Shown here piece after piece: positions 2-45,314 of a stretch of 64,000 nucleotides of DNA. Position numbers and translations under genes: made by a program. The stretch covers positions 37,138,001 to 37,202,000 of the forward strand of contig OZ260666.1 in NCBI GenBank assembly GCA_965285935.1, in the 5' to 3' direction. How positions within the stretch are numbered: the first letter of the stretch is position 1; every line of letters begins with the position of its first letter. The DNA is from Ophelia neglecta. Its lineage: Eukaryota. Below the pieces are notes generated by a model. That model had not been told where the DNA came from. It ran no database searches and worked only from the letters and a program-made list of their open reading frames with translations.

Positions 2-3000
2 GAGACTCAAATTTTAGCACAGGTTACTGAAGTCGCGCCTGAAACTGTGACGCAGGAAATAGTCATCCAGACAGGAGAATCTATTAAACCTGAGGAGATC
101 CAGTTAGATATTTCCCAAGCTTCAGTTGAAATAAAACCAGAAACTCAGATCTCTGAACAGATAACAGAACTAAAACCAGAAACTGTTTCACAAGAATTAG
201 TTATCCAAGTGGGAGAAACAGTTAAGCCTGAAGAAATCCAGTTTGAGGTTGCTGAGGCTGGCATTGAGCTTAAGCCTGAAACCCAAACTACCATCCAAGA
301 GGCAGAAATGCAACCAGAAACTGTAACTGAAGAGGTGATCATCCAAACCGGCGAAAGCGTCCAACCTCAAGAGATCACAATGCAGGTTGTAGAAGCTGAT
401 GTCACCACACCTCAGGAGGCCCAGGTAGCAGAACAAAAGGAAAGGATCAGCCCTGAGACCATCACGGAGGAGGTTGTGATCCCGTCTGGGGAGACTATTG
501 AACCTCAAGAAATTGAGTTCCAGGTATCAGAGGCCCAGGTAGAGGAGAAAATGACCACCGAAGTCATCACACAACAGGTGGAGCCGAGGAGGGAATCAGT
601 CACTCAAGAAATTGTGCTTCAAACAGGTGAGAAGGTAGAACCAGAGGAAACAGTTTTTGACATATCGACGGCTTCAATTGACGTTAAACCCGAGACTCAA
701 ATTTTAGAACAGGTAACAGACATTGTCCCCGAAACTGTGACCCAGGAAATAGTTATTGAGACAGGAGAATCTATTAAACCTGAGGAAATCCAGTTAGATA
801 TTTCCCAAGCTTCAGTTGAAATAAAACCAGAAACTCAGATCTCTGAACAGATAACAGAACTGAAACCAGAAACTGTTTCGCAAGAATTAGTTATCCAAGT
901 GGGAGAAACAGTTAAGCCTGATGAAATCCAGTTTGAGGTTGCTGAGGCTGGCATTGAGCTTAAGCCTGAAACCCAAACTACCATCCAAGAGGCAGAAATG
1001 CAACCAGAAACTGTAACTGAAGAGGTGATCATCCAAACTGGCGAAAGCGTCCAACCTCAAGAGATCACAATGCAGGTTGTAGAAGCTGATGTCACCACAC
1101 CTCAGGAGGCCCAGGTAGCAGAACAGAAGGAAAGGATCAGCCCTGAGACCGTCACGGAGGAGGTTGTGATCCCGTCTGGGGAGACTATTGAACCTAAAGA
1201 AATTGAGTTCCAGGTATCAGAGGGACAGGTAGAGGAGAAAATGACCACCGAAGTCATCACACAACAGGTGGAGCCGAGGAGGGAATCATTCACTCAAGAA
1301 ATTGTGCTTCAAACAGGTGAGAAGGTAGAACCAGAGGAAATAGTTTTTGACATATCTACGGCTTCAATTGACGTTAAACCCGAGACTCAAATTTTAGAAC
1401 AGGTAACAGACATTGTCCCCGAAACTGTGACCCAAGAAATAGTTATTGAGACAGGAGAATCTATCAAACCTGAGGAAATCCAGTTAGATATTTCCCAAGC
1501 TTCAGTAGAAATAAAACCAGAAACTCAGATCTCTGAACAGATAACAGAACTGAAACCAGAAACCGTTTCGCAAGAATTAGTTATCCAAGTGGGAGAAACA
1601 GTTAAGCCTGATGAAATCCAGTTTGAGATTGCTGAGGCCGGCATTGAGCTTAAGCCTGAAATCCAAACTACCATCCAAGAGGCAGAAATGCAACCAGAAA
1701 CTGTAACTGAAGAGGTTATCCTCCAAACTGGCGAAAGCGTCCAACCTCAAGAGATCACAATGCAGGTTGTAGAAGCTGATGTCACCACACCTCAGGAGGC
1801 CCAGGTAGCAGAACAGAAGGAAAGGATCAGCCCTGAGACCGTCACGGAGGAGGTTGTAATACAGACTGGGGAGACTATTGAACCTCAAGAAATTGAGTTC
1901 CAGGTATCAGAGGCCCAGGTAGAGGAGAAAATGACCACCCAAGTCATCACACAACAGGTGGAGCCGAGGAGGGAATCAGTCACTCAAGAAATTGTGCTTC
2001 AAACAGGTGAGAAGGTAGAACCAGAGGAAATAGTTTTTGACATTTCTCAGGCTTCAATTGACGCTAAACCCGAGACTCAAATTTTAGAACAGGTAACAGA
2101 CATTGTCCCCGAAACTGTGACCCAAGAAATAGTTATTGAGACAGGAGAATCTATCAAACCTGAGGAAATCCAGTTAGATATTTCCCAAGCTTCATTAGAA
2201 ATAAAACCAGAAACTCAGATCTCTGAACAGATAACAGAACTAAAACCAGAAACTGTTTCGCAAGAATTAGTTATCCAAGTGGGAGAAACAGTTAAGCCTG
2301 ATGAAATCCAGTTTGAGATTGCTGAGGCTGGCATTGAGCTTAAGCCTGAAACCCAAACTACCATCCAAGAGGCAGAAATGCAACCAAAAACTGTAACTGA
2401 AGAGGTTATCATCCAAACTGGCGAAAGCGTCCAACGCCAAGAGATCACAATGCAGGTTGTAGAAGCTGATGTCACCACACCTCAGGAGGCCCAGGTAGCA
2501 GAACAGAAGGAAAGGATCAGCCCTGAGACCGTCACGGAGGACGTTGTGATCCCGTCTGGGGAGACTATTGAACCTCAAGAAATTGAGTTCCAGGTATCAG
2601 AGGCCCAGGTAGAGGAGAAAAAGACCACCGAAGTCATCACACAACAGGTGGAGCCGAGGAGGGAATCAGTCACTCAAGAAATTGTGCTTCAAACAGGTGA
2701 GAAGGTAGAACCAGAGGAAACAGTTTTTGACATATCTACGGCTTCAATTGACGCTAAACCCGAGACTCAAATTTTAGAACAGGTAACAGACATTGTCCCC
2801 GAAACTGTGACCCAAGAAATAGTTATTGAGACAGGAGAATCTATCAAACCTGAGGAAATCCAGTTAGATATTTCCCAAGCTTCATTAGAAATAAAACCAG
2901 AAACTCAGATCTCTGAACAGATAACAGAACTGAAACCAGAAACTGTTTCGCAAGAATTAGTTATCCAAGTGGGAGAAACAGTTAAGCCTGAAGAAATCCA

Positions 3001-6000
3001 GTTTGAGGTTGCTGAGGCTGGCATTGAGCTTAAGCCTGAAACCCAAACTACCATCCAAGAGGCAGAAATGCAACCAGAAACTGTAACTGAAGAGGTGATC
3101 ATCCAAACTGGCGAAAGCGTCCAACCTCAAGAGATCACAATGCAGGTTGTAGAAGCTGATGTCACCACACCTCAGGAGGCCCAAGTAGAAGAACAGAAGG
3201 AAAGGATCAGCCCTGAGACCGTCACGGAGGAGGTTGTAATACAGACTGGGGAGACTATTGAACCTCAAGAAATTGAGTTCCAGGTATCAGAGGCCCAGGT
3301 AGAGGAGAAAATGACCACCCAAGTCATCACACAACAGGTGGAGCCGAGGAGGGAATCAGTCACTCAAGAAATTGTGCTTCAAACAGGTGAGAAGGTAGAA
3401 CCAGAGGAAACAGTTTTTGACATATCTACGGCTTCAATTGACGTTAAACCCAAGACTCAAATTTTAGAACAGGTAACAGACATTGTCCCCGAAACTGTGA
3501 CCCAAGAAATAGTTATTGAGACAGGAGAATCTATCAAACCTGAGGAAATCCAGTTAGATATTTCCCAAGCTTCAGTAGAAATAAAACCAGAAACTCAGAT
3601 CTCTGAACAGATAACAGAACTGAAACCAGAAACCGTTTCGCAAGAATTAGTTATCCAAGTGGGAGAAACAGTTAAGCCTGAAGAAATCCAGTTTGAGGTT
3701 GCTGAGGCCGGCATTGGGCTTAAGCCTGAAATCCAAACTACCATCCAAGAGGCAGAAATGCAACCAGAAACTGTAATTGAAGAGGTTATCCTCCAAACTG
3801 GCGAAAGCGTCCAACCTCAAGAGATCACAATGCAGGTTGTAGAAGCTGATGTCACCACACCTCAGGAGGCCCAGGTAGCAGAACAGAAGGAAAGGATCAG
3901 CCCTGAGACCGTCACGGAGGAGGTTGTAATACAGACTGGGGAGACTATTGAACCTCAAGAAATTGAGTTCCAGGTATCAGAGGCCCAGGTAGAGGAGAAA
4001 ATGACCACCCAAGTCATCACACAACAGGTGGAGCCGAGGAGGGAATCAGTCACTCAAGAAATTGTGCTTCAAACAGGTGAGAAGGTAGAACCAGAGGAAA
4101 CAGTTTTTGACATTTCTCAGGCTTCAATTGACGCTAAACCCAAGACTCAAATTTTAGAACAGGTAACAGACATTGTCCCCGAAACTGTGACCCAAGAAAT
4201 AGTTATTGAGACAGGAGAATCTATCAAACCTGAGGAAATCCAGTTAGATATTTCCCAAGCTTCAGTAGAAATAAAACCAGAAACTCAGATCTCTGAACAG
4301 ATAACAGAACTGAAACCAGAAACCGTTTCGCAAGAATTAGTTATCCAAGTGGGAGAAACAGTTAAGCCTGAAGAAATCCAGTTTGAGGTTGCTGAGGCCG
4401 GCATTGAGCTTAAGCCTGAAATCCAAACTACCATCCAAGAGGCAGAAATGCAACCAGAAACTGTAATTGAAGAGGTTATCCTCCAAACTGGCGAAAGCGT
4501 CCAACCTCAAGAGATCACAATGCAGGTTGTAGAAGCTGATGTCACCACACCTCAGGAGGCCCAGGTAGCAGAACAGAAGGAAAGGATCAGCCCTGAGACC
4601 GTCACGGAGGAGGTTGTAATACAGACTGGGGAGACTATTGAACCTCAAGAAATTGAGTTCCAGGTATCAGAGGCCCAGGTAGAGGAGAAAATGACCACCC
4701 AAGTCATCACACAACAGGTGGAGCCGAGGAGGGAATCAGTCACTCAAGAAATTGTGCTTCAAACAGGTGAGAAGGTAGAACCAGAGGAAACAGTTTTTGA
4801 CATTTCTCAGGCTTCAATTGACGCTAAACCCGAGACTCAAATTTTAGAACAGGTAACAGACATTGTCCCCGAAACTGTGACCCAGGAAATAGTTATTGAG
4901 ACAGGAGAATCTATTAAACCTGAGGAAATCCAGTTAGATATTTCCCAAGCTTCAGTTGAAATAAAACCAGAAACTCAGATCTCTGAACAGATAACAGAAC
5001 TGAAACCAGAAACTGTTTCGCAAGAATTAGTTATCCAAGTGGGAGAAACAGTTAAGCCTGATGAAATCCAGTTTGAGGTTGCTGAGGCTGGCATTGAGCT
5101 TAAGCCTGAAACCCAAACTACCATCCAAGAGGCAGAAATGCAACCAGAAACTGTAACTGAAGAGGTTATCATCCAAACTGGCGAAAGCGTCCAACCTCAA
5201 GAGATCACAATGCAGGTTGTAGAAGCTGATGTCACCACACCTCAGGAGGCCCAGGTAGCAGAACAGAAGGAAAGGATCAGCCCTGAGACCGTCACGGAGG
5301 AGGTTGTAATACAGACTGGGGAGACTATTGAACCTCAAGAAATTGAGTTCCAGGTATCAGAGGCCCAGGTAGAGGAGAAAATGGCCACCGAAGTCATCAC
5401 ACAACAGGTGGAGCCGAGGAGGGAATCAGTCACTCAAGAAATTGTGCTTCAAACAGGTGAGAAGGTAGAACCAGAGGAAACAGTTTTTGACATATCTACG
5501 GCTTCAATTGACGTTAAACCCGAGACTCAAATTTTAGAACAGGTAACAGACATTGTCCCCGAAACTGTGACCCAAGAAATAGTTATTGAGACAGGAGAAT
5601 CTATCAAACCTGAGGAAATCCAGTTAGATATTTCCCAAGCTTCAGTAGAAATAAAACCAGAAACTCAGATCTCTGAACAGATAACAGAACTAAAACCAGA
5701 AACTGTTTCGCAAGAATTAGTTATCCAAGTGGGAGAAACAGTTAAGCCTGATGAAATCCAGTTTGAGGTTGCTGAGGCTGGCATTGAGCTTAAGCCTGAA
5801 ATCCAAACTACCATCCAAGAGGCAGAAATGCAACCAGAAACTGTAACTGAAGAGGTGATCATCCAAACTGGCGAAAGCGTCCAACCTCAAGAGATCACAA
5901 TGCAGGTTGTAGAAGCTGATGTCACCACACCTCAGGAGGCCCAGGTAGCAGAACAGAAGGAAAGGATCAGCCCTGAGACCGTCACGGAGGAGGTTGTGAT

Positions 6001-7523
6001 CCCGTCTGGGGAGACTATTGAACCTCAAGAAATTGAGTTCCAGGTATCAGAGGCCCAGGTAGAGGAGAAAATGACCACCGAAGTCATCACACAACAGGTG
6101 GAGCCGAGGAGGGAATCAGTCACTCAAGAAATTGTGCTTCAAACAGGTGAGAAGGTAGAACCAGAGGAAACAGTTTTTGACATATCTACGGCTTCAATTG
6201 ACGCTAAACCCGAGACTCAAATTTTAGAACAGGTAACAGACATTGTCCCCGAAACTGTGACCCAAGAAATAGTTATTGAGACAGGAGAATCTATCAAACC
6301 TGAGGAAATCCAGTTAGATATTTCCCAAGCTTCAGTAGAAATAAAACCAGAAACTCAGATCTCTGAACAGATAACAGAACTAAAACCAGAAACTGTTTCG
6401 CAAGAATTAGTTATCCAAGTGGGAGAAACAGTTAAGCCTGATGAAATCCAGTTTGAGGTTGCTGAGGCTGGCATTGAGCTTAAGCCTGAAATCCAAACTA
6501 CCATCCAAGAGGCAGAAATGCAACCAGAAACTGTAACTGAAGAGGTGATCATCCAAACTGGCGAAAGCGTCCAACCTCAAGAGATCACAATGCAGGTTGT
6601 AGAAGCTGATGTCACCACACCTCAGGAGGCCCAGGTAGCAGAACAGAAGGAAAGGATCAGCCCTGAGACCGTCACGGAGGAGGTTGTGATCCCGTCTGGG
6701 GAGACTATTGAACCTCAAGAAATGGAGTTCCAGGTATCAGAGGCCCAGGTAGAGGAGAAAATGACCACCGAAGTCATCACACAACAGGTGGAGCCGAGGA
6801 GGGAATCAGTCACTCAAGAAATTGTGCTTCAAACAGGTGAGAAGGTAGAACCAGAGGAAACAGTTTTTGACATATCTACGGCTTCAATTGACGTTAAACC
6901 TGAGACTCAAATTTTAGAACAGGTAACAGACATTGTCCCTGAAACTGTGACCCAAGAAATAGACGAATCTGTCAAACCTGAAGAAGTCCAGATTGACATA
7001 TCTCAAGCAGCAATAGAAATTGAACCAAAAATTCAAAAAGATGGACAAGTTACAGTGTTGAAACCAGAAATTGTCACAGAGGAGTTATTTATGCAAGAAG
7101 GAGAAACTACCAAACCTGAGGAAATCTTGTTTGACAGTCCAAAAGATTCAATGAAGATGACGCCAGATGTACAGATGGTTGAACAAGTATCTGAACTTAG
7201 ACCAGAGGATCAAACTGAACTGCCACAAGATTCATTTATTGAAATTGGTGAAGCTCGCATAGATATGAGTACCGCAGACATTGGAGAAATACTCATCTCA
7301 AAGCCAGAAACCAGTGTAGAAATCGCTTCTGGTGAACCCGAAATTTCTGAAGCTGATGAATTTGATGATGCTCTTGATGTGACCCAATCTGAGATGGTAA
7401 TTACAGACATTACTGATGAATTAAAGTCAGACTCTACCAAACAGGACATCACAGTTGAGGAATACCAACCAGTCTGTGAGGAAACTGTTTCATTCATGGA
7501 AGCTCTTGAGGAGAAACCTGAAG
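2..7523 (+). CDS. Giant exon (5' end outside window): acidic E/Q/T/V/I/P-rich tandem-repeat region
   Basis: Frame open from nt 2; likely donor GAAG|gtactc after 7523 (phase 1), compatible with the exon at 9960. Confidence 0.88.
38..6937 (+). repeat. Coding tandem repeat: 10 x 690 bp (230 aa), each unit = 5 diverged 138-bp (46-aa) subunits
   Basis: PETVTQEI codons recur every 690 nt (38, 728 ... 6938); subunits begin PETVTQE/PETVSQE/PETVTEE/PETVTEE/RESVTQE, 46 aa each. Confidence 0.97.
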
Positions 7524-9959
7524 GTACTCATTTAAGGAATCTTGCTTTTGCATGGCATTTTTGGTATACTTCAGACAGTATACCACCAACCAAGCTGTTC
7601 ATGCTGTTAACCTTATACTAGTCAAACTTTAAATCAAATGCAGTGATGCATTTAGCTGTTAATATTATATTGGAACTGTCAAAAAGTGGAACCACATGCG
7701 GACATATCATACCAGCATGGAGCAAGATTATGTTGATTGCATGGAACTAGCTCTTTGACACATTTACAACTGACTTGTAGCTGGTATCTGAAACTCACAT
7801 TCAGCACTTTGGCATGCTTTTAAACAAAACTCCGGCTAAACAACAATGGAAAAACATCTTTATATTATTTGACTTATTGCTTATCCTTGCTTTGGGAAAC
7901 ACATCAGTTATTTCATGGATATTGGATGGACAGAAGCGTCAATTTATTTTACAGTTTCTTTTTGTTTGACACACATGGATTTTACATGAAAAAACACTTT
8001 TAGTCCTTGATTATTTTTCCGTTTCTCTAATGCTATTGGCCAAGGAAACCTAATAATCAACCATTGACATGACTCACAGTGACAGTGAATTATATTCAGT
8101 TTATTTTATTTTACTAGGTGGATTTTTACAGCTGTTTGATATGGAATTATTTATTTCACTTCTCATTTCAATGCATATTTTTTTATAACACATTGATTTT
8201 TACAGTTCTAAAGTCATTTTTATGTATAATGTTTCACTTGTACGTACTATTTATATAATTTGCTTTGATATGTTTTCCATTTTACTTTATTTTAATGTCC
8301 TTTTTTTGTTATTATATTCAGGTTTGCTATATTTTGTTTCAATTTTGATATGTTCCTTTTTTTCTTCTTTTTTCTGTTTTGTTCTTTTTAGAAATGTACA
8401 TTTAATTTCTATATTTTACATTCCCAATTTTTATTTATTAAATCACCACTGACCCATTTATTATTTCATACTCTTTTGCTTTGATTTTACCTTTTTTTTA
8501 TATTCCAATACACAGGTTTTTTCTTCGTTAATAATGGTCATTTTCTATGTTTTCTACATTTATGATATTTATGACATTTACATATTCTATTTTTATATTA
8601 CTAATGTTTATTATTGAAATTACCACTGACATATTTATTTTCTTTATTTTATATTCCTTGCATTGTTTTTACAATTTTTTTTATATTCTTGTATTATGTT
8701 GTTTTCATTCATGATGTTTTCATTGTTTTCATTTTTTTTCATGAGATTCATGAGATTCATAACATTTATGACATTTACATGTTCTTTTTCTTTTATTACT
8801 AATGTTTATTATTTAAATTTCATTATTAATTTAATATTTTCATTATTTTATATTTTTTAATACATATATGATACATATTTTTCAATTATTCTTTTCAAAA
8901 GCAGTAATCAAACTTAGCCATTTTAACCTGTTTATTGCTCACACCTACTTTCCTAATCAAATATTGAACTTATTTTATTTTTGTTATTTATTTTCTATTG
9001 TTTTTTTTTTAAATTGAATTCCATAGATTAAATAATTTTTCTTTCACCTTGCTCGCTTTAATTTTTTTCTTGTAACATGTGTTAGATAGAAACTTTATTA
9101 ATTTTACACTGTTAAAATTAAACGCATAACATTTTCAAGTTAAATTATGCATCTTGACTCTTAATTTCACTCTTAAAAAATTGTTTCATGTATTTATCTC
9201 TGGTATATGATAACAGGAATGACTAATAATACAATTAAAATTGCATTGAGTTTGTATGAACCTTATGCTACAATGAACTAACATCAACTTCCTTGATTAA
9301 ATACTGATATTTGATAAAGAATTGTTAGTTTGTTACTGTACTCAGTGTGTGTCAAATATGTTATAGACTATTCTTATGTTTGTCATTGCTGTGGCCTTTT
9401 TAACCTTGAATATGATTATGAATACATTTTTGTGCAGCATTATTCATAGATCCTCATTGTTTAGTTTTGCATGCTGTGTGAATAAAAAGTTAAAGCAATA
9501 CATCAATTAGGAGTGTGTGTGATTATTGCATTTTTTAGAAACAATTAAATACCCCAGTTAGTTAATGTGTGCTACTAGAGAGAGAAATTCTAAATCCCTG
9601 TATACATATCCCAAGTTTGAACCTACACGAAAACAATTGAACGGTACAACCTACACATTTCATTAAAAACGCATGTCCCTTGCCTACTCCTCCCCCCCCC
9701 CAAAAAAATTATCACCAAGCCTCCCACCACACCTGTAGATAGTGCTGGTATTAAATATACACAGAACTTGTACATGCTTGCAAAGTGTACCGACTTGAAT
9801 ACAGCATGACATCCAAACAAACCCTCACAATGCAGCACAAAAAACATTCTGCTTTCAGCCAAACATATTAACACATTTGTCAAATTAATTAGGACCCTGT
9901 TCAATGACAATATGGGCATGATCAATCATTAATCTTTAATGTGTTCTTTTCCCAAATAG

Positions 9960-10672: not shown

Positions 10673-11058
10673 GTAAGTTGGATTTACAAAGATATGATTA
10701 AGTAAGAAAGGGCATCACGGGAGGCAATTTATGCAAATGGGTGTCCTTCTCGGAACTCTTTATAATAACAAGGCTGATGATAAAGGGCCGAAGATCACAT
10801 TTAATCCCTAGACACTGCGGAAATTAAAGGGGAATGTATTTTGTAGTGACAAACTGGGTAAATGTATTCCCTATTTGCTATTCATAACCTATTTATCACA
10901 TCAAAAATTATTGTGCATGGATCCCATGTGTGTTTTGTCATTTTGATGGCATGCATGTAGGATTGTATGGTTATAAACCTATAAACACAAAGCATGTAAG
11001 GAAACCTCTTGCTGTTTATTACTGTGTGGTTTGCATTTGGAAGTGTGATCTTTTTCAG

Positions 11059-12168
11059 ATAAAACTGGTAATATAAATGATATTGAGCTAGAAGAATCCA
11101 CAATCTATGACGAATTGAAAGTAAATAATGCCATTGTTAAAGAGGACAGTATCATTCATCTAGAACTTTTTCCAAAAGAGCAGGAAAGTGAAAGTGATGT
11201 TCTTGAAGAAATTGTGGAAGAAAAAACCACAAAGCAAAGTGATCCAAATTCATTGTCTATCAATGATGAAACTGCTGTCAAGAGTTTTGTAAATGGCAGT
11301 AGTCCTAACCAGTCCATGATTACCACAGAGAGTTCACAAGATCTATCAAAACAAGATCAGCTGAGGATAGAGGTGTCCGAGCCTGGTGCGGTGACCAGAC
11401 AGGTTCTGAGTATTGAGCCAGACATGGAGGTGACATCCGAGATCCATGTTAAACCTCAGATGGTGGCTGCTGAGGCTCTCAGTCACTCTGTCCAGCAGCT
11501 GGAATGGGCACTCAGTCAGGAGATAGACAAGTCTGTCAAAACAGAGCAAACTGAGGTGACCGATGAAATCACAGTGGAGACGCGAGTCACAGAGGTGAAA
11601 ACACTGAAAATGGAAATGGGAGAATCTGGTCGCATTTCGGTGTCAGAGACGACTGAAGTCCAGACTGATACTGACTTGCATGAACAGAAGACTACTAAGG
11701 AGAAGGAAGAACTGGTGGTATCTCACAAGACAGACAGAAAGGCATTGGAGGATACATCAAGGTCACCACCATACTCTCCTGCTTTCTCACCACAATTCTC
11801 CCCATATTCAAGGCATGAACGCTCTTTTGAGCGACCCTCAAGTCGCCATAGCACTAGCAAAGATAGTGACCAAGAGGCAAGCTTGCACAATGGAAGTCTT
11901 CTAGACATCCACCACAGTGACTCCGTGTTCCCATTTTATGTGGCCATCAGTCCATATGAGCCAGAGTCAGATGAGGTCATGTCCCTTCATGAGGGGGAGC
12001 AGGTGGAAATACTGGATGATAACCAGGAGGATTGGTGGCTGGTTAGAAAATGCTGGAACAAGGCCGAAGGTTGGGTCCCGGGACAGTATTTACAAGAAAA
12101 GGCGGAATACGAGAAAATATTAGATGAACAACTTGCAGAACAAATAAAAAACCTTCCTTCGGAATGCA
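11059..12168 (+). CDS. Exon: acidic/low-complexity linker followed by an SH3 domain
   Basis: ctttttcag| ... TGCA|gtaagc; YVAISPYEPESDEVMSLHEGEQVEILDDNQEDWWLVR...EGWVPGQYL fits the SH3 consensus. Confidence 0.9.
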
Positions 12169-12394
12169 GTAAGCTTTTGTGTTTTTGCTTAGTCATAGAA
12201 ACAGCCAAAAATATAGCCGGAACAATAAAGTATATTATTTAATCTGCTTTTTTAAAATAATGGCATGTAATATAGCTGTTTTGCTCATTTATATAACACG
12301 ATTAAAAACTACACACCCTGTTTCATCCTAGAAACAGTGTGTTTTTTACATGTTTGCATGCCTGTACATGTACCTGCTTGCTTTCCTCACCCAG

Positions 12395-13185: not shown

Positions 13186-13818
13186 GTCAGTAAATGATAC
13201 CAGGCCAGTAAATAATGACTATCATGGAGGGCAACAGGTTGAACTTTGATTCCCCATGTTGCCTGAAATATTGAAGACCTTATTTGTTATGTTATACATG
13301 AACATCCAATATGTATTTAAACAGACCAATTATCTGCTGACTGGTGTTACAGAACTACAATTTATCAATTGCCATAAACACAAAACGAGTCAATTTAAAA
13401 AATGTATTTATTCAGTAAAAGGTGCTAATGGCCTGGTTCTTTATAAAGACACACCATAAATAATGGTATCTGTAATAAGCGGGGGTTTTGAAAACAATAA
13501 TAATATTAACATCATGATTTTGATAGCTTTAATTCTATATTATTGGCTTTCTCTAAGATGAGCAGTCTGCTGCTACAAGCATAACTCGTCTGAAACCTCA
13601 GGATAATATAGACAGATCCATCATGAAGCTCTTCTGAATCATTAACGTTAAATGGCCTCTTCATATAGCAACTAAACTCTACAATATCTATTAAGCATGC
13701 TTATAACGTTTCCAACTGTACTAAGTTATAAATATGAATATAAATTTGTTTGTCACTTGGCTGTTGTTACAGTATGGTTCAGGGATGAGTTTTCTTATTG
13801 ACTTGTCTAATGTTGCAG

Positions 13819-14011
13819 ATTACCTGGTTTAAGGATGAGTTAACTATTGAGCAAACAAATCGCTATGAGCTGAAGATTGAGGAGGAGGACCATACTTATA
13901 CCACTTACCTCACCATTCACAATGTAGAACTCTCCGATGCCGGAAAGTACAAAATTACTGCAAGGAATGACTATGGAGAGGTCACAATGGTGGTCAGCAT
14001 GATTGTCAAAG
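13819..14011 (+). CDS. Ig I-set exon, C-terminal half
   Basis: gttgcag| ... G|gtgaga; ITWFKD...DAGKYKITARNDYG. Confidence 0.92.
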
Positions 14012-14403
14012 GTGAGAATATCTATATATATCATCCATTTCACCTGCTGGAACTTATCCATGTATAGGTGATACCCTGGTATATTTGTTACATAAATAAA
14101 TCTGTAATTCATGCCATACAGTATAAGGAACTATTTTCAAAACAGATTGATAAATACAAAATTAATAAAGAGCAATCATTATCTAATGTTAGGTTGAACA
14201 CAAGGAATTGCAACTTACATGCTTATTTCTACTTGGAACAATCTTATGTTAATTACTATTTAAAGTTGTCTTCAATGTAGTGATATACAACTTGGTTTGC
14301 ACAGGATACTATAATCATCATACCGTTCTGGTTTTACAGCCCAATCAATTTCTAAAAAGCTTATTTTGATATATTTCTATTCCTAAATTTTTACATCCAA
14401 CAG

Positions 14404-14948
14404 AAGTTGAGAAGACTGAGGAGATTGAGGTAAGATCCAGATTGCGATCCAGGTTGTCTGAATCTGCTTCTGAATCTGATGTTAGAGTAGAAAAACCGCA
14501 TGACTTCCGTAGTGTGCTGAAAAAGCCTGCTACTACCCAAGACCCATCCTCTAAAACCACCTTCAAAACCAAGCAGAAAGATTTTAGGTCTGTGCTGAAA
14601 AAGAAGGACCAACCAAGTCCTTCAAAACTTGCTCAACAAGAGGAAGAGCCCATGGACTGGACTTTGTTATTGAAAAGAAAGTCTAAAACTGAACCAGAAT
14701 TAACACAGCATGTAGAATCTGGTACAAAGACTGAAAAGCTAGACTTCAGGGATGTTCTGAGGAAGTCGTCTGAATCAGAAGACCCTAAAATCAAACAGAA
14801 GACAGAAGCAGCCGAACAGAAAGATTTCAGGACTGTTCTAAAGAAAGCTGAGCCCTCTTCTACTAAAACTGAGCATGTGCCACCCAAAGAACCGAAACAG
14901 AAAGATTTTAGAGCCTTGCTGAGAAAGCCTAGTAGTTCTAGTTCTGAG
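14404..14948 (+). CDS. Exon with five DFRxxL motifs (putative F-actin-binding repeats); alternative short form 14404-14429
   Basis: tccaacag| ... GAG|gtttgc; DFRSVL, DFRSVL, DFRDVL, DFRTVL, DFRALL. Confidence 0.82.
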
Positions 14949-15229
14949 GTTTGCTTGCATGTTTGTTTTTGTTTCTTTTAATACTTATTATTTTGAGTTA
15001 AATCAACCCATACTAGTTTATACTTTTCATAACCTGCCCAAATTACATATAACACCCCTATTAATAGATGCATGTTGAGCAAGTTCCATTTTAAATAAGA
15101 CTAGTTAGTATCATCTGTTCTTAATGGTACAAACCACTTTTTGTAGAAACGATTGTTTTGGTCTTAGGATAGCTTTCTGCCATGTATTTTCCACTTCGTA
15201 ATGCTCAGGATTTGACTGTGCCCTTTCAG

Positions 15230-15515
15230 AAACCACAGCCCCAGGTTGTGGAGAAGCCGCTGGATGTGACTGTGACGGAAGGTGAGAGTGCACGTTTTCA
15301 GTGTCGTGTGATTGGCATGCCCCCTCCTCAGATCACCTGGCTTTTCCAGGGTAGGCCTATTGTAGATGAGGAGGTTTACACCATAGAGGAGGGAGAGGGC
15401 GGCCTACAGGTCCTCTCCATACCTGAATGCTTCCCTGAGGATGCAGGTGTCTACACCATACGAGCCTCCAATGAGCATGGCATTACAGAGGCCTCTGCAA
15501 TACTCACTGTACTGG
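15230..15515 (+). CDS. Ig I-set exon
   Basis: ccctttcag| ... G|gtcagt; FQCRVIGMPPPQITW...EDAGVYTIRASNEHG. Confidence 0.93.
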
Positions 15516-17341
15516 GTCAGTGCATGGCTTTAGTGTTTGTTAAAGGTGTCGGCTGTGAGACCATATACTCCAGGAACAGATATGTAGATAGTAGTTAAGT
15601 GAAAAAATGAAAGGAATTGTGACCTATAAACATGAATGGCTGTCCTAAAAACAAAATTCTTATCATATATGAAACTTATTTTTCAATTGTCTGAATGGTA
15701 TATGAAAGCATCAGTAAATTCACATACATGTACATGTAATATACTGAATTTTAAAGCTATACTTTTTCTTGTTAAATCATTGTGACTCCTGTAGTTTGTA
15801 TTCTCACAGCCTTGCCTTTTTTGTAAACATTTAGGTAGTTACCAAAGTATACCCCTACATCATGTCCTTAAATCATTAGATTTCGCAACTTGTAGTTTAA
15901 CTTCTAAGCCACCCCAGAATTTTTTGAAGTTGCTGTGAGCCAAATAGCACAGTCAAACCAGGATAATGTGTGTATTACCTCAAAATATTTGATGTGTGCA
16001 TGTCTGTTTAACAGTACCTCTCATTATTGTGGCAGAACAAGGATGGTAATCAAGGAATACTAGTCATGCAGCTATAGTTTCGACGGTGCTGGTCAAAGCT
16101 GCACTTTAAAGCTTTTCAGAAATTGATATTGGAACTTTAATGTAAACTGTTATCTTCTGAAATTTTGAGCACCTGCTGTTTCTGGAGACCCTTGTACACC
16201 CACATTATAACAGTGAATTGTGACATTGTCTGATGGTTTGGAGTATGCCAAGCAAAACCTTGCCAGTCATGGCTGCCACACACAGTGGGTGCATGCGTAT
16301 GAAGTGAATAGTTTCCCTAAACTCTTATCATGTACGAATCTATGAATTTTATAACTTTCTTATCCACCTGTTTTAGGTTTTCAAGACCATGACTTGGGTT
16401 AATTCAATGTTGAGGTGACTCCTTTATCTCCTAAACTATGTTAACAAACTTGAACATTGACAGTTCTTTCCAAAAATTACCACTTGCAGGGTGTACCTAG
16501 TATGTCAGGTATATACATGAATGCCAGGTAGAATTGTTACAGTAACACTTATGATAATGGTAAGTGATTATCAGGCATAAGATGTTCCCATACTTGGTAA
16601 TATTTGGAAAGAAGCCAAGACATCCAGGACTTTGAGCTGGACCAAGAGGGATATACAAGCCACTTGAATATTTAGCATGCTTACATTATCTCATTCAAGA
16701 GCTTGGGAGCATTCAAATCTATCCAAATCACCCCTCTCAAAGATCAAGTTGTAATACCAATGTATTAAGATGATTTTGGCAAACAATCTTGGATCGACCC
16801 AACATTTATGTGGGTGTTCCCCCAAAAAACATGCATTTTTTCAAAAATTTCATACAAACAGTTTGTCAACCGTTTATAAGGAATTATTATCTAATATTCT
16901 GAAGCAAAAGCATATAACATGCAGGGCACAGAGCTGAGGTCACTGTCACTAGTCAGACACTTATCATGACCAAGTTGTCAGTTGACCTCCCACCCCTCCA
17001 GATCGAGAACCACAGTAGCTTGGCCTTGGGCAAACTTTTGTACACCATTTGTCTCTATCAGTGTGAATTTGGATACAATGTACACTAGTCATGTTGTAGA
17101 CCTCAATTGGATCTCTAGTCCTAGTGTGATTTCTAAATGTTGTGGCTTCAGTGGTGTAAAAAGGGTGGCTCCTAATCATGTGAATTGGCATAAATTTGGG
17201 AAAATGTAGTGTGATTCACTGGATGCATTGTGAAATTGTGTAAAAAATTAGGAAAAGAGCAAAGAACCACTAGCCGGGTGGACTAAGGGAAGCTGACACC
17301 AGTCTAGGTGTGTTCCTTACTGGTCTGTTTCTGTGTTCCAG

Positions 17342-31666: not shown

Positions 31667-32462
31667 GTGGGCTTTAGGCGTGTTAATGGCATGGATTTTA
31701 CATTTTTACTGGCAGCATCCTTAGAGATCTGCATGGTATTCTTTTTGACCAATAACCATCTCATGACTTACAACATAGGGAAAACTGAAACATACAACAA
31801 TTGGTGCCTTGCAATGTATTATGTTATGCATGAATTTCAGTGTGAGCATGCCTGTTCCCTACACCCTCTACATGCTTAATGATCCTATTGCAACTTTCCT
31901 TGGCATTGAAGAGCCATGTGTGCAGTGGAGCATCACTCCAGATGAAGCAAACAATTTTTTTGCGTGATATTTAATGACAAGGCTTATGATGAGAAGAAAC
32001 ACCAGACTAATATTCCTAGTGTGCTGTTTTGTTTCTGGACTCCTGGCTGTTAGACATTGACACTAAGTTTGGTAATGTAGTCTGTTGTTTGTTTTGGTAT
32101 TAGAGTCAATTTTGACAATGTTGTCAGTTTGAGCATCGTTTTCTACCTGTTCATGTGAAATATGGCTTGTTGATACCTGAGTTCCCTGAGGCGAAAACCC
32201 TATTTGTATAAACCTCTATTCTGGTTAGTTTGTTATTAGGATACGTTTTGAAACTGCTTATTTGTTTTTTGTTGTATTTATACGGTAGCTACTTCTGTCT
32301 GCAGTTTTTATTGGTTGTAGAGTTATTTAAGGCTGGGGGGTCTTTATATGAAATTTGTAAAAAATGGTAGGATTTATTCTCACTGACTGGCTCTTCTCAT
32401 TGTATGCACTGACCAAACATTTAATTCGAGAGGGGTCTCTCAAATATCAAAACATTTTACAG

Positions 32463-32611
32463 AGCTGCCCAAAGCTGAGGAGCCTGAACCTGTTCAGGAG
32501 GTAGTTGAGGAGCTTCCTCAGGAGGTTGTAGAGGAACAGCCTCAGGAACCACAACCTGAACCTAAACCCAGCATGGAACCACCAGTGTTCACCGAGATCT
32601 ACAAGGAAACT
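32463..32611 (+). CDS. PEVK-like exon ending in the first strand of the next Ig
   Basis: ttttacag| ... ACT|gttagt; ELPKAEEPEPVQEVVEE...EPPVFTEIYKET. Confidence 0.88.
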
Positions 32612-32969
32612 GTTAGTATTGACTTCACTAAGTAGTCCTTGGTGCTGAAAATCTTGCGTTGTGATGGCAACAGCTATTTATGCTATTTGATAGTGAACCA
32701 CTTATTATTTAATAAGGATTATTCATTTTCATACTTCCACAGATTAGCCCTTTAAGTGACATTGTTTTTCCTTAGTGGCCACATTAATCCCCTTGATACT
32801 CCCAACTGGGGAGATGTATATTGGCACAATTAGCAAATTTGAAATTGATAAACCAAGGATCCTTTTACAACATTATTTATTCACAGATTTCATTATTATT
32901 TATTATTAGAACACAGGTTTCCTGCTCTTAAAGGCAATTTCATTTACGTATTTTGTTTCGAATTTGAAG

Positions 32970-33513
32970 ACCATTGAGGTGAAGAAGAACCTTGTTCTGA
33001 CTGCCAAAGTCACAGGGAAACCTGAGCCTACTGTCAAGTGGTTTGTAGACGGAACCGAGATCAAGCCAACATTCAAAATAGTAATGAAGAAAGAGAATGA
33101 AGTATGCACACTGACCATCTCAGGGGTCACCTTGAAGATGACAGGAGTGTACAAATGCGTTGCCACCAACGAGGCTGGAGAAGCTATTCACGAGGCTAAG
33201 ATAACAGTCTGCGAGAAGATGGAGCCTCCAGTCTTCACACAGAAACCAGCAAAGAAGAATGTTGTTGAGGGCAGCCCAGCTAAATTTGAGGCCAAGGTCA
33301 AAGGCGTTCCGGTTCCTGAGGTGATCTGGTACCGAGGTGAGGAAGAGGTTGTGCCTACTGAGCGAGTCACAGTGACCACCAAGGAGGTGAAGGGTATTGT
33401 CCACACCATTCTCACATATGACAAGTGTGTTGTGGAGGACATATGTGACCTCAAATGTTTTGCCAAGAATCCGGCTGGAGAAGCAACTTGCACTACTACA
33501 CTCAATGTGAAAC
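32970..33513 (+). CDS. Repeat unit 1: two-Ig exon
   Basis: ttgaag| ... C|gtatga; 544 nt. Confidence 0.9.
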
Positions 33514-33730
33514 GTATGAATGCTTTGACGTTTTAGCATGCTTTTCAAATTTCCCAATAATTTCCAGGGTTTCCTTCATTTAAAGGTGATGCTTTGTAGC
33601 TAAATCCAAAGAATACTTCTATATATTTCAAGTATATGATTAATTGGAAAGTTCTGGCACGGAAGCAATATTTTTTAGGAAATATTGGCCACATTTAAAT
33701 TAGTTTTCTCTCCCTTGGTATTATCAACAG

Positions 33731-34015
33731 TCTATACAGAAAAACCAACGGTAAAGAATCTAACTGATGTAGAGATCATGGAACAGGAGGATGCTGTCTT
33801 TGAGACAGAGATTACAGGGAAACCAGAACCCACGGTTGAGTGGTTCTCTGGGTCCGTCAAACTGGAGCCTTCTGATAAGGTTATCATTGAAAAAGAAAAT
33901 ACAAAGTGCAGACTGACACTGAAGACATGTGAAGTCAATCAGACTGGGGCCATCTCAGTGAAAGCCACTAACGATGTTGGTTCTGAGAGTTCTAAAGCCA
34001 AATTGACAGTCAAAG
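33731..34015 (+). CDS. Repeat unit 1: single-Ig exon
   Basis: tcaacag| ... G|gtatgt; 285 nt (alternative acceptor 33740). Confidence 0.9.
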
Positions 34016-34320
34016 GTATGTTGTATGCGTTCGGCATTGTGTGGACATTCTCCTTTTATTCCCTGTTGTTGTTTCTACTAGTGTGCTAAAGTGTATTTAT
34101 TAATGAAGTTTCTGCATGGTGATCTTCTGAAGGTGCTATGGTGTTCCACACGTTCAAAAAGTCTTTTGATTCAACATTTTATTATTGTGAAGATCATTAA
34201 ATGTCATTTGCTTGTAAAGAATTCCCTCACCTGTTGTATCACCTTTCCATTGATTGCCAATTACAAGTGTGTTTTTCTCTGGTTTGTCTTTCACTGTCCA
34301 TAATACCTCCCTGTTACCAG

Positions 34321-34443
34321 CCCCTGTTGTTGAAGAACTTGTACCTGAAGAAGAGGACACCACAGAGTTTGCTTTTTCTCTTCCTTCTCCTGAGCCTGAA
34401 ACTGAAATTGCGACTGTTGAGGAAACAGTTGATATAGTTGAAG
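34321..34443 (+). CDS. Repeat unit 1: acidic linker exon
   Basis: gttaccag| ... G|gtataa; 123 nt, APVVEELVPEEED... Confidence 0.82.
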
Positions 34444-35419
34444 GTATAAAAATGAGCATGACTTTCCCCGTTGCTTATGAGTTTTTGATATTTTCACTTA
34501 TATTTAATAGCATCCAGTAGGATTTTGACACAACTGTTGTTTTCTGTTTAACATTGTTAAGCAGATAGTTTGCATACTGTTCGCGCAAAGATGAAATCAT
34601 TCATGACTGCTCTGTGCAATTTATTAATTGATAGTTATTTTTCCTGAATGCACATATATGTAAGCATTATGTGTTTGGAGAATAATCTTTTAATTCTTCC
34701 CTAGCATTTGACTCCTAGTTTTATGGTAATGCTAAGGTTGCACATCCTGTGCTCCCGAATTGCCGATAGACAGAATGTTTTGTATCCTAGATATAATGAT
34801 ATGGGTCGTGGGGAATGTGATGATAGTTATTAGCCGGGATTTGATTAGTTATAGATAATCGAATGGCACTAGAAACCCCTCTCTCTAGTGATTTGCTTGA
34901 TTGTCATCCTGCTAAGATCTGCCTTAGTCATGATTGTTTATGGGCAAACCACAGTCTTAGTTGTATTTTCGTCCACTGTTCTAAAAAATGTGGTCACATG
35001 ATTATGATCTGAGTATGGTCTGTTGACATTCCTACGCAGACTAATTGAACAGAACAAACTAGTCTTACATGTTGTCATCAGCTGTTTTATGTTCTCAAGC
35101 ATGTGTCAGAAATACCCATGTTTGCCATTTGAATATGACTATAAGTGTCATATAGAAAGCAGATTCACTGTTCATTAACTGTTTATTGGAAATAGGAAAT
35201 ACCTTGAACCTAATAGTGGTAGTATGGTTTATTTCTTCAATATGAACTTGGAAGTTGTGAAACTTAATAACAGAAATTGTTGGAGCTTAGTAATGATGTC
35301 ATTATCTGTGGGATTATAAAAATAAATCCTCTTTGAAAATATTACCTTAATTTCTACTGTACTGTGAACAAGCCGAGTTTTGTGGGAATAATCATATATG
35401 GGGCCATGGGATATTACAG

Positions 35420-35589
35420 AGAAACCAAAGACGCCAGAACCAGAACCAGAGCCTGTCGTAGAAGAGCAGGCGCCGGAGCCTGAACCAGAACCAGAGCCCG
35501 TCACGGAAGAGCAGGCCCCAGAGCCTGAACCTGAACCCAAAAAGCCTGATACGGAACCGCCGAAATTTACAGAAGTCTTCCAAGATACT
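35420..35589 (+). CDS. Repeat unit 1: PEVK-like exon
   Basis: attacag| ... ACT|gttagt; EKPKTPEPEPEPVVEEQ. Confidence 0.85.
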
Positions 35590-35774
35590 GTTAGTTTTGA
35601 TTCTTATATGTTTAAGATTGTTATCTGACTATAAATCTTTATTTATATAGTATCGTTTGTCAGTTAAATACACATTATGAAAGAAAAAAATGGGTGGTTC
35701 CATGAGTTTCCTAGTTCCACCAAGAGTCAACTTCCCATAGCACCAGATTTATTGACGTTTATCTTCGCTTTAAG

Positions 35775-36318
35775 ACCATTGAGGTGAAGAAGAACCTTGT
35801 TCTGACTGCCAAAGTCACAGGGAAACCTGAACCTACTGTCAAGTGGTTTGTAGACGGAACCGAGATCAAACCAACATTCAAAATAGTAATGAAGAAAGAG
35901 AATGAAGTATGCACACTGACCATCTCAGGGGTCACCTTGAAGATGACAGGAGTGTACAAATGCGTTGCCACCAACGAGGCTGGAGAAGCTGTTCACGAGG
36001 CTAAGATAACAGTCTGCGAGAAGATGGAGCCTCCAGTCTTCACACAGAAACCAGCAAAGAAGGATGTTGTTGAGGGCAGCCCAGCTAAATTTGAGGCCAA
36101 GGTCAGAGGTGTTCCGGTTCCTGAGGTGATCTGGTACCGAGGTGAGGAAGAGGTTGTGCCTACTGAGCGAGTCACAGTGACCACCAAGGAGGTGAAGGGT
36201 ATTGTCAGCACCACACTCACATTTGACAAGTGTGTTGTGGAGGACATATGTGACCTCAAATGTGTTGCCAAGAATCCGGCTGGAGAAGCAACTTGCACTG
36301 CTACACTCAATGTGAAAC
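35775..36318 (+). CDS. Repeat unit 2: two-Ig exon
   Basis: ctttaag| ... C|gtacga. Confidence 0.9.
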
Positions 36319-36535
36319 GTACGAATGCTTTGACGTTTTAGCATGCTTTTCAAATTTCCCAATAATTTCCAGGGTTTCTTTCATGTAAAGGTGATGCTTT
36401 GTAGCTAAAGCCAAAGAATACTATTATATATTTCAAGTATATGATTAATTGGAAAGTTCTGGCACGGAAGCAATATTTTTTAGGAAATGTTGGCCACCTT
36501 TAAATTAGTTTTCTCTTCCTTGGTATTATCAACAG

Positions 36536-36820
36536 TCTATACAGAAAAACCAACGGTAAAGAATCTAACTGATGTAGAGATCATGGAACAGGAGGATGCT
36601 GTTTTTGAGACAGAGATTACAGGGAAACCAGAACCCACTGTTGAGTGGTTCTCTGGGTCCGTCAAACTGGAGCCTTCTGATAAGGTTATCATTGAAAAAG
36701 AAGAAACAAAGTGCAGACTGACACTGAAGACATGTGAAGTCAATCAGACTGGACCCATCTCAGTGAAAGCCACTAACGATGTTGGTTCTGAGAGTTCTAA
36801 AGCCAAATTGACAGTCAAAG
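36536..36820 (+). CDS. Repeat unit 2: single-Ig exon
   Basis: tcaacag| ... G|gtatgt. Confidence 0.9.
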
Positions 36821-37127
36821 GTATGTTGTGTGTATTTGGCATTGTGTGGCCACTCTCCTTTTATTCCCTGTTTGTCGTTTCTACTAGTGTCCTTAAGTGT
36901 ATTTATTAAAGAAGTTTCTGCATGTTGATCTACTGAAGGTGTTATGATATAACACACGTACAAGAATCTCTTGATTCAACATTTTATTTATTGTGAAGAT
37001 CATTAAATGTCATTTGCTTGTAACTAAATTCCCTCACCTTTTGTGTCTCCATTCCATTGGTTGCCAATTACAAGTGTGTTTTTCTCTGGTTTGTCTTTCA
37101 CTGTCCATAATACCTCCCTGTTATCAG

Positions 37128-37250
37128 CCCCTGTTGTTGAAGAACTTGTACCTGCAGAAGAGGACACACCAGAGTTTGCTTTTTCTCTTCCTTCTCCTGA
37201 GCCTGAAACTGAAATTGCGACTGTTGAGGAAACAGTTGATATAGTTGAAG
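37128..37250 (+). CDS. Repeat unit 2: acidic linker exon
   Basis: gttatcag| ... G|gtataa. Confidence 0.82.
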
Positions 37251-45296: not shown

Positions 45297-45314
45297 GTAT
45301 GTTCTGTGTGAACA

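What the first reader, a model, noticed from the sequence alone, without database searches (positions are those of the whole stretch)
14404..14961. Five DFRxxL actin-binding motifs in a titin-like protein, switchable by an internal in-frame 5' splice site
Seen: DFRSVL (14502), DFRSVL (14580), degenerate DWTLLL (14655), DFRDVL (14742), DFRTVL (14823), DFRALL (14904), spaced 25-29 aa. A near-consensus donor GAG|gtaaga lies after 14429 in phase 0, the same phase as the weaker distal donor GAG|gtttgc after 14948. Using it deletes 519 nt (173 aa) containing all motifs, in frame. A TGCATG lies 8 nt past the weak distal donor. Known: DFRxxL repeats at ~28-aa spacing are the F-actin-binding elements of vertebrate smooth-muscle MLCK, and a DFRxxL motif has been described in Mytilus twitchin. 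Inference: an on/off thin-filament tether controlled by splicing, possibly muscle-type specific.
Basis: partly seen in the sequence, partly recalled or inferred. Interest (0 to 1): 0.8.

Follow-up and report, generated by a model that had tools for sequence, protein, structure and literature searches.

The report
Actin-binding repeat array in invertebrate titin
One exon of a giant titin-like muscle gene, probably from a mollusc, encodes five copies of the short motif that anchors vertebrate myosin light-chain kinase to actin filaments, and splice signals conserved in related species suggest, without RNA proof, that the array can be spliced out.

Summary
Exon 14404-14948 encodes five DFRxxL motifs and one degenerate copy, spaced 25-29 residues apart. 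An in-frame GAG|GTAAGA lies after 14429, the distal donor GAG|GTTTGC lies after 14948, and TGCATG sits at intron position +8.

The gene is a giant titin/twitchin-family gene. It has a 2539-codon PEVK-like exon, an SH3 exon and many Ig exons. Fn3 repeats and a twitchin-like kinase follow downstream on the same strand.

The array is not chance. Orthologous genes in at least four other lineages carry 3-9 motifs at the same place. The repeat unit (EQxDFRxVLKK) also matches the array of a gene with MLCK architecture.

New here:
- The internal donor-like GAG|GTARG is kept in phase 0, 7-28 nt into the exon, in all three species for which I had this DNA.
- GCATG follows the distal donor within 13 nt in those same three species.
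- Between the window and its closest orthologue, only the exon's 5' start and the DFR cores are conserved at nucleotide level.

- Weak donors are normal in this gene.
- No RNA data exist, so splice-site use is unproven.
- Actin binding is inferred only; a complex prediction gave no answer.

Verdict: a real, conserved MLCK-type array, with a plausible but untested splice switch.

The parts
13819..14011 (+). Second half of an I-set Ig domain, the exon upstream of the DFR exon; its donor AAG|GTGAGA is in phase 1
   Evidence: Pfam I-set match at E 1.4e-13; donor position; acceptor read from the open frame
14404..14948 (+). DFR exon of 545 nt, phase 1 in and phase 0 out; encodes 181 full codons of a disordered K/S/E/T-rich linker with five DFRxxL motifs and one degenerate copy
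   Evidence: no Pfam family; AlphaFold2 mean pLDDT 58.5 with short helices only at motif cores; two synonymous polymorphisms
14404..14429 (+). Purine-rich first 26 nt of the exon, which would remain as a micro-exon if the internal donor is used; conserved at nucleotide level with L026
   Evidence: 20 of 30 identical here, against 10-15 of 30 in introns and in non-motif coding windows
14427..14435 (+). Internal donor-like site GAG|GTAAGA in phase 0; the only G|GTRRG in the exon
   Evidence: homologous GAG|GTAAGG in L026 (28 nt into the exon) and GAG|GTAGGG in L024 (7 nt into the exon), both in phase 0
14502..14519 (+). DFRSVL motif 1
14580..14597 (+). DFRSVL motif 2
14655..14672 (+). Degenerate copy DWTLLL
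14742..14759 (+). DFRDVL motif 3
14823..14840 (+). DFRTVL motif 4
14904..14921 (+). DFRALL motif 5
14946..14954 (+). Distal donor GAG|GTTTGC in phase 0
   Evidence: orthologous donors are CAG|GTGTGC (L026) and AAG|GTGTGG (L024)
14956..14985 (+). TGCATG at 14956-14961 followed by a GU/U-rich tract; a candidate intronic splicing enhancer of the Rbfox-type GCAUG kind, with a U-rich run of the kind that helps weak donors
   Evidence: GCATG at intron +9 (window), +5 (L026) and +6 (L024). From local GCATG density, the two replications together have p of about 5e-4
15230..15515 (+). Next exon, a complete I-set Ig domain with a phase-0 acceptor and phase-1 donor; its own intron starts with GTCAGTGCATG
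   Evidence: Pfam I-set match at E 9.8e-23; 74% and 51% identical to the orthologous exons of L026 and L024; GCATG at 15522

Best explanation
Exon 14404-14948 belongs to a giant titin/twitchin-family muscle gene. It encodes an intrinsically disordered linker between two Ig domains. The linker carries a periodic array of the MLCK-type motif: EQxDFRxVLKK, five good copies and one decayed copy, about 27 residues apart.

In vertebrate MLCK each such motif contacts one actin monomer. By that analogy, the array most likely fastens this part of the giant protein along a thin filament. It lies just after the PEVK-like spring and the SH3 domain. This step is inferred.

Inclusion of the array is probably regulated. 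A strong donor-like site, GAG|GTAAGA, lies 26 nt into the exon in the same phase as the true exon end. Its use would join a 26-nt purine-rich micro-exon directly to the next Ig exon and remove exactly the 173 codons that hold all the motifs. Use of the distal donor would be promoted by the conserved GCAUG and U-rich element that begins 8 nt into the intron. This step is also inferred, from conservation only.

Shown: the motifs, the reading-frame phases, the homology of the array, and the conservation of the two splice elements. Inferred: actin binding, use of the internal donor, and the identity of the factor that reads GCAUG.
For: Motifs, spacing and phases.

Gene context:
- Pfam I-set and SH3 matches.
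- A 2539-codon PEVK-like exon and tens of Ig exons.
- Fn3 repeats, then kinase exons, downstream on the same strand. Their best solved relatives are Aplysia twitchin kinase, MYLK4 and titin kinase.

Homology of the array:
- phmmer against 1.84 billion proteins found only DFRxxL arrays.
- P0004, from a locus with the order Ig, six DFR-type motifs (four strict DFRxxL, two DYRxxL), Ig, Ig, Fn3, kinase start, matches at E 3.9e-7. Searched back in this genome, it hits only this exon, at E 7e-7.
- 74 repeat units from 13 sequences share E(-3) Q(-2) D F R x V/L L K/R K.

Orthology:
- L024 and L026 have the same exon order: SH3, Ig, split Ig, DFR exon, Ig, IQ exon, Ig-Ig.
- The P0006 contig shows DFR, Ig, IQ.

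Splice elements:
- GAG|GTARG in phase 0 is the only G|GTRRG in each of three DFR exons, and lies within their first 28 nt.
- The residue after Val changes between Arg and Gly, yet intron position +5 stays G.
- Window against L026 is at background identity except at the exon start and the DFR cores.
- GCATG lies within 13 nt of the distal donor in three species.
- In L024 and L026, skipping the whole exon would shift the frame, whereas the internal donor keeps it.

Literature:
- Five motifs 28-29 residues apart target long MLCK to actin stress fibres (PMC2185581).
- One MLCK binds per three actins through three motifs (PMC2196421).
Against: - No RNA evidence exists. The only public runs that hold the locus are genomic contigs without joints.
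- This gene's own donors are degenerate, so the distal donor is not unusually weak.
- Strong donor-like sites also occur inside other coding exons here: ten phase-1 copies in the PEVK-like exon and one at 15280.
- In L024 the internal site lies 7 nt from the acceptor, too close for ordinary exon definition. L024 also has another in-frame route, through tandem donors of its mini exon.
- L029 lacks both the internal site and the GCATG.
- E-V-R/G after an acidic run could be a protein-level or enhancer-level constraint.
- A GCAUG at +5 to +9 overlaps the region paired by U1 and U6, so its effect could be negative.
- The complex prediction with actin gave no answer, score 0.13.
- Whether the kinase 135 kb downstream belongs to the same transcript is not shown.
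Confidence: 0.5

Rival explanations
1. The exon is constitutive. The internal GAG|GTAAGA is never used as a splice site. It is kept because it encodes the end of an acidic E-E-E-V-R/G stretch, or because a U1-binding, purine-rich start helps define the acceptor of an unusually long exon. The GCAUG and U-rich element merely strengthens a constitutive weak donor.
For: - Weak donors are the rule in this gene.
- Donor-like sequences sit unused, as far as is known, in other coding exons.
- ORFs P0006 and P0013 also read E-E-V-G at the protein level, which fits a peptide constraint.
- The 7-nt spacing in L024 argues against use there.
Against: - An Arg to Gly change at a conserved peptide is not conservative, yet it keeps G at intron position +5.
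- Val is GTA in 3 of 3 species although GTA is only 24% of Val codons here.
- The site is in the one phase that joins in frame to the next exon in all three species.
Confidence: 0.3
2. Splicing is regulated, but as a block. The DFR exon is skipped together with the following Ig exon, and with the mini exon where one exists. The internal donor plays no part.
For: - The DFR exon plus the Ig exon total 831 nt, a multiple of three, flanked by phase-1 boundaries.
- The Ig exon's own intron also begins with TGCATG in the window and in L026.
- Block skipping of Ig exons is the known mode in the vertebrate titin I-band (my knowledge, not checked here).
Against: - It does not explain conservation of the internal GTARG, nor the nucleotide conservation of the first 26-28 nt.
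- L024 lacks GCATG after its Ig exon.
Confidence: 0.12
3. The array is not an actin binder in this protein. It would serve as a phosphorylation-controlled spacer, or bind another partner, and the resemblance to MLCK would be shared ancestry without shared function. This rival is independent of the splicing question.
For: - No binding evidence was obtained.
- One copy has decayed to DWTLLL.
- Copy number varies from 1 to 9 among orthologues.
- Similar arrays occur in ORFs without Ig neighbours: L027 and L038.
Against: - D, F, R and L are close to invariant across 74 units from distant lineages, the least conserved being F in 63 of 74. The 24-31 residue period is also kept, near the 28-29 of MLCK. 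This is what binding to successive actin subunits predicts.
- Mutating these residues abolishes filament binding in MLCK (PMC2196421).
Confidence: 0.25

Closest known systems
DFRxxL (DXRXXL) actin-binding region of vertebrate smooth-muscle and non-muscle myosin light-chain kinase (MYLK)
   Same: - Same core motif, with a basic tail after the Leu.
- Same number of motifs as long MLCK (five).
- A similar period: 25-29 residues here against 28-29.
- Placed in a disordered stretch next to I-set Ig domains.
- Detectable sequence homology to the array of a gene with MLCK architecture.
   Different: - Here the array sits deep inside a giant titin-like gene, after a PEVK-like exon and an SH3 domain, more than 135 kb upstream of the nearest kinase exons.
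- Vertebrates vary motif number (five or three) through an internal promoter. Here the candidate mechanism is an alternative 5' splice site that removes all the motifs.
- Binding to actin is untested here.
Molluscan twitchin (Mytilus), the phosphorylation-controlled link between thick and thin filaments in catch muscle
   Same: - A giant Ig/Fn3 protein with an MLCK-like kinase.
- It binds F-actin in a regulated way (review PMC12040844).
- The kinase exons downstream of this window are most similar to Aplysia twitchin kinase among solved structures.
   Different: - Twitchin is reported with 24 Ig and 15 Fn3 domains and no SH3. This gene has a 2539-codon PEVK-like exon, an SH3 domain and many more domains.
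- Kinase identity to Aplysia twitchin is only moderate, so this is not clearly the twitchin orthologue.
Actin-binding parts of other titin-family proteins: the vertebrate titin PEVK segment and Drosophila Sallimus/kettin Ig-linker modules (from my knowledge, not tested here)
   Same: An I-band-like part of a giant elastic protein that contacts the thin filament, in a gene whose I-band exons are widely alternatively spliced.
   Different: Those contacts use PEVK repeats or Ig-linker units, not DFRxxL motifs.
Rbfox-type regulation through GCAUG in the downstream intron (established in vertebrates, flies and worms; my knowledge)
   Same: (U)GCAUG just downstream of the regulated splice site, conserved across species while the rest of the intron is not.
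   Different: - The element lies unusually close to the donor, at +5 to +13.
- No factor, tissue pattern or RNA isoform has been observed.
- A search for the Fox-1 C-terminal family in this genome was uninformative.

Membership tests
MLCK-type DFRxxL actin-binding array | Three or more copies of D-F/x-R-x-x-L | tested here: met
   Five strict copies and one degenerate copy
MLCK-type DFRxxL actin-binding array | Regular spacing of about 28-29 residues | tested here: met
   Spacings of 26, 25, 29, 27 and 27; the 28-29 figure is from PMC2185581
MLCK-type DFRxxL actin-binding array | Sequence homology to the array of a gene with MLCK architecture | tested here: met
   P0004 matches at E 3.9e-7 and reciprocally at E 7e-7. 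Locus L025/L037 shows Ig, six DFR-type motifs (four strict DFRxxL, two DYRxxL), Ig, Ig, Fn3 and a kinase start. That the locus is an MLCK is my reading of its architecture.
MLCK-type DFRxxL actin-binding array | Lies in the same polypeptide as an MLCK-family kinase | tested here: inconclusive
   Kinase exons lie on the same strand about 135 kb past the window's end. Continuity of the transcript is not shown.
MLCK-type DFRxxL actin-binding array | Binds F-actin, one motif per actin subunit, and loses binding when the motif is mutated | not testable with these tools
   The complex prediction gave no answer; this needs co-sedimentation.
Titin/twitchin family of giant muscle proteins | Long tandem arrays of I-set Ig domains | tested here: met
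Titin/twitchin family of giant muscle proteins | Fn3/Ig repeats and a C-terminal autoinhibited kinase of the titin/twitchin/MLCK group | tested here: inconclusive
   Both are present downstream on the same strand. Whether this is one gene or two tandem genes is unresolved.
Titin/twitchin family of giant muscle proteins | PEVK-like elastic low-complexity segment | tested here: met
   A 2539-codon open exon rich in E, P, V, T and Q, built of repeats of about 230 residues. No Pfam family matched, so the feature is met by composition only.
Regulated alternative 5' splice site with a downstream GCAUG enhancer | Two in-frame competing donors | tested here: met
   Donors after 14429 and after 14948, both in phase 0; the same holds in L026 and L024
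Regulated alternative 5' splice site with a downstream GCAUG enhancer | (U)GCAUG in the downstream intron, conserved across species | tested here: met
   At +9, +5 and +6 in three species; absent in L029
Regulated alternative 5' splice site with a downstream GCAUG enhancer | Both junctions observed in RNA, with tissue bias | not testable with these tools
   No RNA run holds the locus

The most novel reading that the evidence does not exclude
A conserved splice switch turns a five-site thin-filament anchor on or off in an invertebrate titin. The switch would be read through a GCAUG and U-rich element beside a weak donor. Muscles could then set passive stiffness, or a catch-like filament tether, by isoform choice. 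The MLCK actin-binding array would descend from such a titin-family module, or share a portable origin with it.
Probability: 0.3. Interest if true: 0.75.

Novelty: new variant of a known kind. Interest (0 to 1): 0.55.

Why it matters
In the open papers searched, DFRxxL arrays are described only for vertebrate MLCK. Three points follow from finding one here.

- **Shared module.** A conserved array of 3 to 9 copies sits at a fixed place in a giant titin-like gene in several invertebrate lineages. This links the actin anchor of MLCK to the titin family, and suggests a portable, countable thin-filament tether.
- **Regulation.** If the conserved internal donor is used, the tether is an all-or-none splice option. 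That would be a simple way to tune how the elastic filament engages actin in different muscles.
- **Testability.** Both ideas can be tested directly, by junction counts and a co-sedimentation assay.

Tried and rejected
- **RNA evidence.** The search for sequencing runs found only three contig sets from one sample. Laid on 13700-15600, they are unspliced genomic DNA without joints.
- **Complex prediction.** Full-length actin (P0120, chosen as a non-primate sequence) was folded with residues 105-181 of the exon. The score was 0.13, a verdict of no answer, so it counts neither for nor against binding.
- **Pfam.** No family matched the exon.
- **Word-index protein search.** With the exon alone it gave one hit.
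- **Metagenome scan.** The scan with the Ig-exon alignment gave three loci, of which only L032 was informative.
- **Contigs without DNA.** No DNA could be had for the contigs of P0005, P0006 and P0013. The E-V-G seen in two of those ORFs could therefore not be checked at nucleotide level.
- **Mini exon.** I looked in intron 14012-14403 for the mini exon present in L024 and L026, and found none.
- **Rbfox gene.** The Fox-1 C-terminal family gave no match, and its controls did not ring either, so the result is uninformative.
- **Papers.** The Funabara twitchin papers are not held. One paper search was wasted on 'twitchin' matching 'twitching'.
- I recomputed from coordinates.

Full report
**What is there**

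The window is G000:C9:37138001-37202000, from a 762-Mb animal genome. It has 38% G+C, a CpG ratio of 0.37 and no N.

The + strand carries one long run of coding exons:
- an open exon of 2539 codons made of E/P/V/T/Q-rich repeats (2-7618);
- an exon with an SH3 domain (about 11049-12200);
- tens of I-set Ig exons.

The next 200 kb downstream (L004-L023) continue on the same strand. They hold more Ig exons, then about 55 Fn3 matches, then kinase exons at L017:2158-3286 and L018:1359-1619, and further Ig domains. Among solved structures, the kinase exons are most similar to Aplysia twitchin kinase, then MYLK4, then titin kinase.

So 'titin-like' is fair. Whether the window and the kinase belong to one transcript or to two tandem genes is not resolved.

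An actin exon of this genome finds molluscan actins as its best named matches: Haliotis, Mya, Mytilus and Crassostrea. The animal is therefore probably a mollusc. Actin is a poor marker, and I claim no more than that.

**The observation**

- The exon runs 14404-14948. Its acceptor is in phase 1 and fits the phase-1 donor of the preceding half-Ig exon at 14011.
- It encodes DFRSVL, DFRSVL, DWTLLL, DFRDVL, DFRTVL and DFRALL, with spacings of 26, 25, 29, 27 and 27 residues.
- GAG|GTAAGA after 14429 and GAG|GTTTGC after 14948 are both in phase 0, as is the acceptor at 15230.
- The 519 nt between the two donors hold all six motifs.
- TGCATG begins at intron position +8.

When the exon's residues were shuffled, two or more DFRxxL appeared in 5e-6 of trials.

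The segment has no Pfam family. It is predicted to be disordered (mean pLDDT 58.5, pTM 0.16), with short helical turns at three motif cores and one helix at the N-terminus.

Genomic contigs from one sample show two polymorphisms inside the exon. Both are synonymous.

**Relatives**

A phmmer search of 1.84 billion representative proteins found nine hits, all of them DFRxxL arrays. A profile search added more.

*Loci with the same gene order.* Their contigs show that the array sits at a fixed place in orthologous genes.
- L024 and L026 have the order SH3 exon, Ig, split Ig, DFR exon, Ig, IQ-motif exon, double Ig.
- The flanking Ig exon is 51% (L024) and 74% (L026) identical to ours.
- The P0006 contig shows DFR, Ig, IQ.
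- P0005, P0012 and P0013 share unique sequence after the array with those loci.

*Copy number* differs: 9 in L024, 7 in L026 (5 strict), 5+1 here, and 3-4 in L029.

*A mini exon.* L024 and L026 also have a 49-nt mini exon with one motif-like unit (DFKKQL, DLRDTL) just upstream. A more distant orthologue, L032, has such a mini exon with DFRSQL and no detectable large array. Our window has no mini exon.

*An MLCK-type locus.* Locus L025/L037 has six DFR-type motifs (four strict DFRxxL and two DYRxxL) fused to an Ig domain, followed by Ig, Ig, Fn3 and the start of a kinase. I read this as the architecture of smooth-muscle MLCK. Its array matches ours at E 3.9e-7. Searched back in this genome, it finds only our exon.

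*The repeat unit.* Across 74 units from 13 sequences the unit is E(-3) Q(-2) x D F R x V/L L K/R K, with a period of 24-31 residues. The array is therefore homologous to the MLCK-type array, not a chance look-alike.

*Other contexts.* Arrays also occur in ORFs without Ig neighbours (L027 and L038). The module looks portable.

**What is known**

In vertebrate MLCK, three DFRxxL motifs bind three actin subunits, and mutating them abolishes filament binding (PMC2196421). The long isoform has five motifs spaced 28-29 residues apart, which suffice for targeting to stress fibres (PMC2185581).

The seven open papers that contain the term DFRXXL appear, from their titles and abstracts, to deal only with vertebrate MLCK. 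I read two of them.

The papers are not held, so this stays unverified. A review confirms only that twitchin binds F-actin in a phosphorylation-dependent way (PMC12040844).

**The splice question**

I inferred 33 Ig-exon donors from the domain ends, 29 of them non-redundant. They show almost no consensus at intron positions +3 to +6. On that matrix the internal donor scores 6.04 and the distal donor 6.17. GTTTGC is therefore not odd in this gene. Strong donor-like sites also lie inside other coding exons. From one species alone, the case would be weak.

1. In L026 the DFR exon reads GAG|GTAAGG 28 nt after its acceptor. In L024 it reads GAG|GTAGGG 7 nt after. Both are in phase 0, and both join in frame to a phase-0 Ig exon. 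In each of the three exons this is the only G|GTRRG.
2. The residue after Val is Arg or Gly, a non-conservative change that keeps G at +5. Val is GTA in all three species, though GTA is only 24% of Val codons here.
3. In a window-to-L026 alignment, introns and most coding windows sit at 10-15 identities per 30. The exon start has 20 of 30, followed by an identical GAGGTAAG. Most of the aligned DFR cores have 18-20 of 30.
4. In L024 and L026 the DFR exon enters in phase 2 and leaves in phase 0. Whole-exon skipping would break the frame there, while the internal donor would not.
5. GCATG follows the distal donor at +9 (window), +5 (L026) and +6 (L024), each time followed by TTT. From local GCATG density, the two replications together have a chance of about 5e-4. 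No GCATG lies in the 300 nt upstream of any of the acceptors.

Cautions.
- L029, a fourth lineage, has a phase 0-0 exon, no internal site near the start and no GCATG.
- The 7-nt spacing in L024 is too short for ordinary exon definition. L024 also has tandem mini-exon donors that offer another in-frame bypass.
- A GCAUG this close to the donor might hinder rather than help.
- No RNA run exists for the locus.

**Mechanism, with odds**

- The array is a real, conserved coding feature: about 0.95.
- It binds thin filaments in the MLCK manner: about 0.6, by homology and by the conserved period.
- Its inclusion is regulated by splicing in some way: about 0.55.
- That regulation is specifically through the internal donor: about 0.45.

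The GCAUG and U-rich element fits what is known of Rbfox-type and U-rich-binding activators of weak donors. This is my knowledge and was not tested here.

**Limits**

The upstream flank could not be fetched. The complex prediction gave no answer and counts neither way.

**Verdict**

I class it as a new variant of a known kind, of moderate to good interest.

Noticed in passing
window 625, 1315, 2005 ... 6835 (every 690 nt in the exon 2-7618): Each repeat of the giant PEVK-like exon carries CAG|GTGAGAA in phase 1, the same phase as the inferred phase-1 boundaries of the Ig exons downstream. These could be internal donors that vary the length of the spring.
   Followed up: no
window 15516-15526; L026 just after 11814: The Ig exon that follows the DFR exon also has TGCATG within the first 11 nt of its intron, in the window and in L026 but not in L024. 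This may point to co-regulation of the two exons.
   Followed up: partly
L024 9237-9285; L026 about 9838-9886; L032 5471-5567: A mini exon upstream of the DFR exon encodes one motif-like unit (DFKKQL, DLRDTL, DFRSQL). It is 49 nt in L024 and L026 and 97 nt in L032, and runs from phase 1 to phase 2. It is absent from the window. L032 has TGCATG 15 nt past the mini exon's donor and seems to lack the large array. L026 also has a second acceptor 9 nt into the DFR exon that would keep the frame if the mini exon were skipped.
   Followed up: partly
L027 10001-10498 and L028 9399-9896 (GCA_012263305.1, GCA_012271395.1); L038 10001-10831: DFRxxL arrays of three to four copies occur in ORFs with no Ig exon nearby, one of them next to a DEPDC5 C-terminal exon on the other strand. 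The motif array therefore exists in other gene contexts too.
   Followed up: no
window 14430-14470: Directly after the internal donor the exon encodes RSRLRSRLSESASES, and two motifs are followed by RKSS or RKPSS. These are basophilic-kinase-like sites that could make actin binding phosphorylation-dependent, as in twitchin. This was read by eye only.
   Followed up: no
window 32387-45337: A unit of about 2.8 kb is repeated five times in tandem with very high identity. Each unit holds a PEVK-like exon, a double-Ig exon and a single-Ig exon. This looks like a recent super-repeat expansion.
   Followed up: no
window 14649-14672: The degenerate copy reads M-D-W-T-L-L-L. From memory, the short vertebrate MLCK isoform starts with Met directly before a DFRxxL. 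This is probably coincidence; an internal start was not examined.
   Followed up: no
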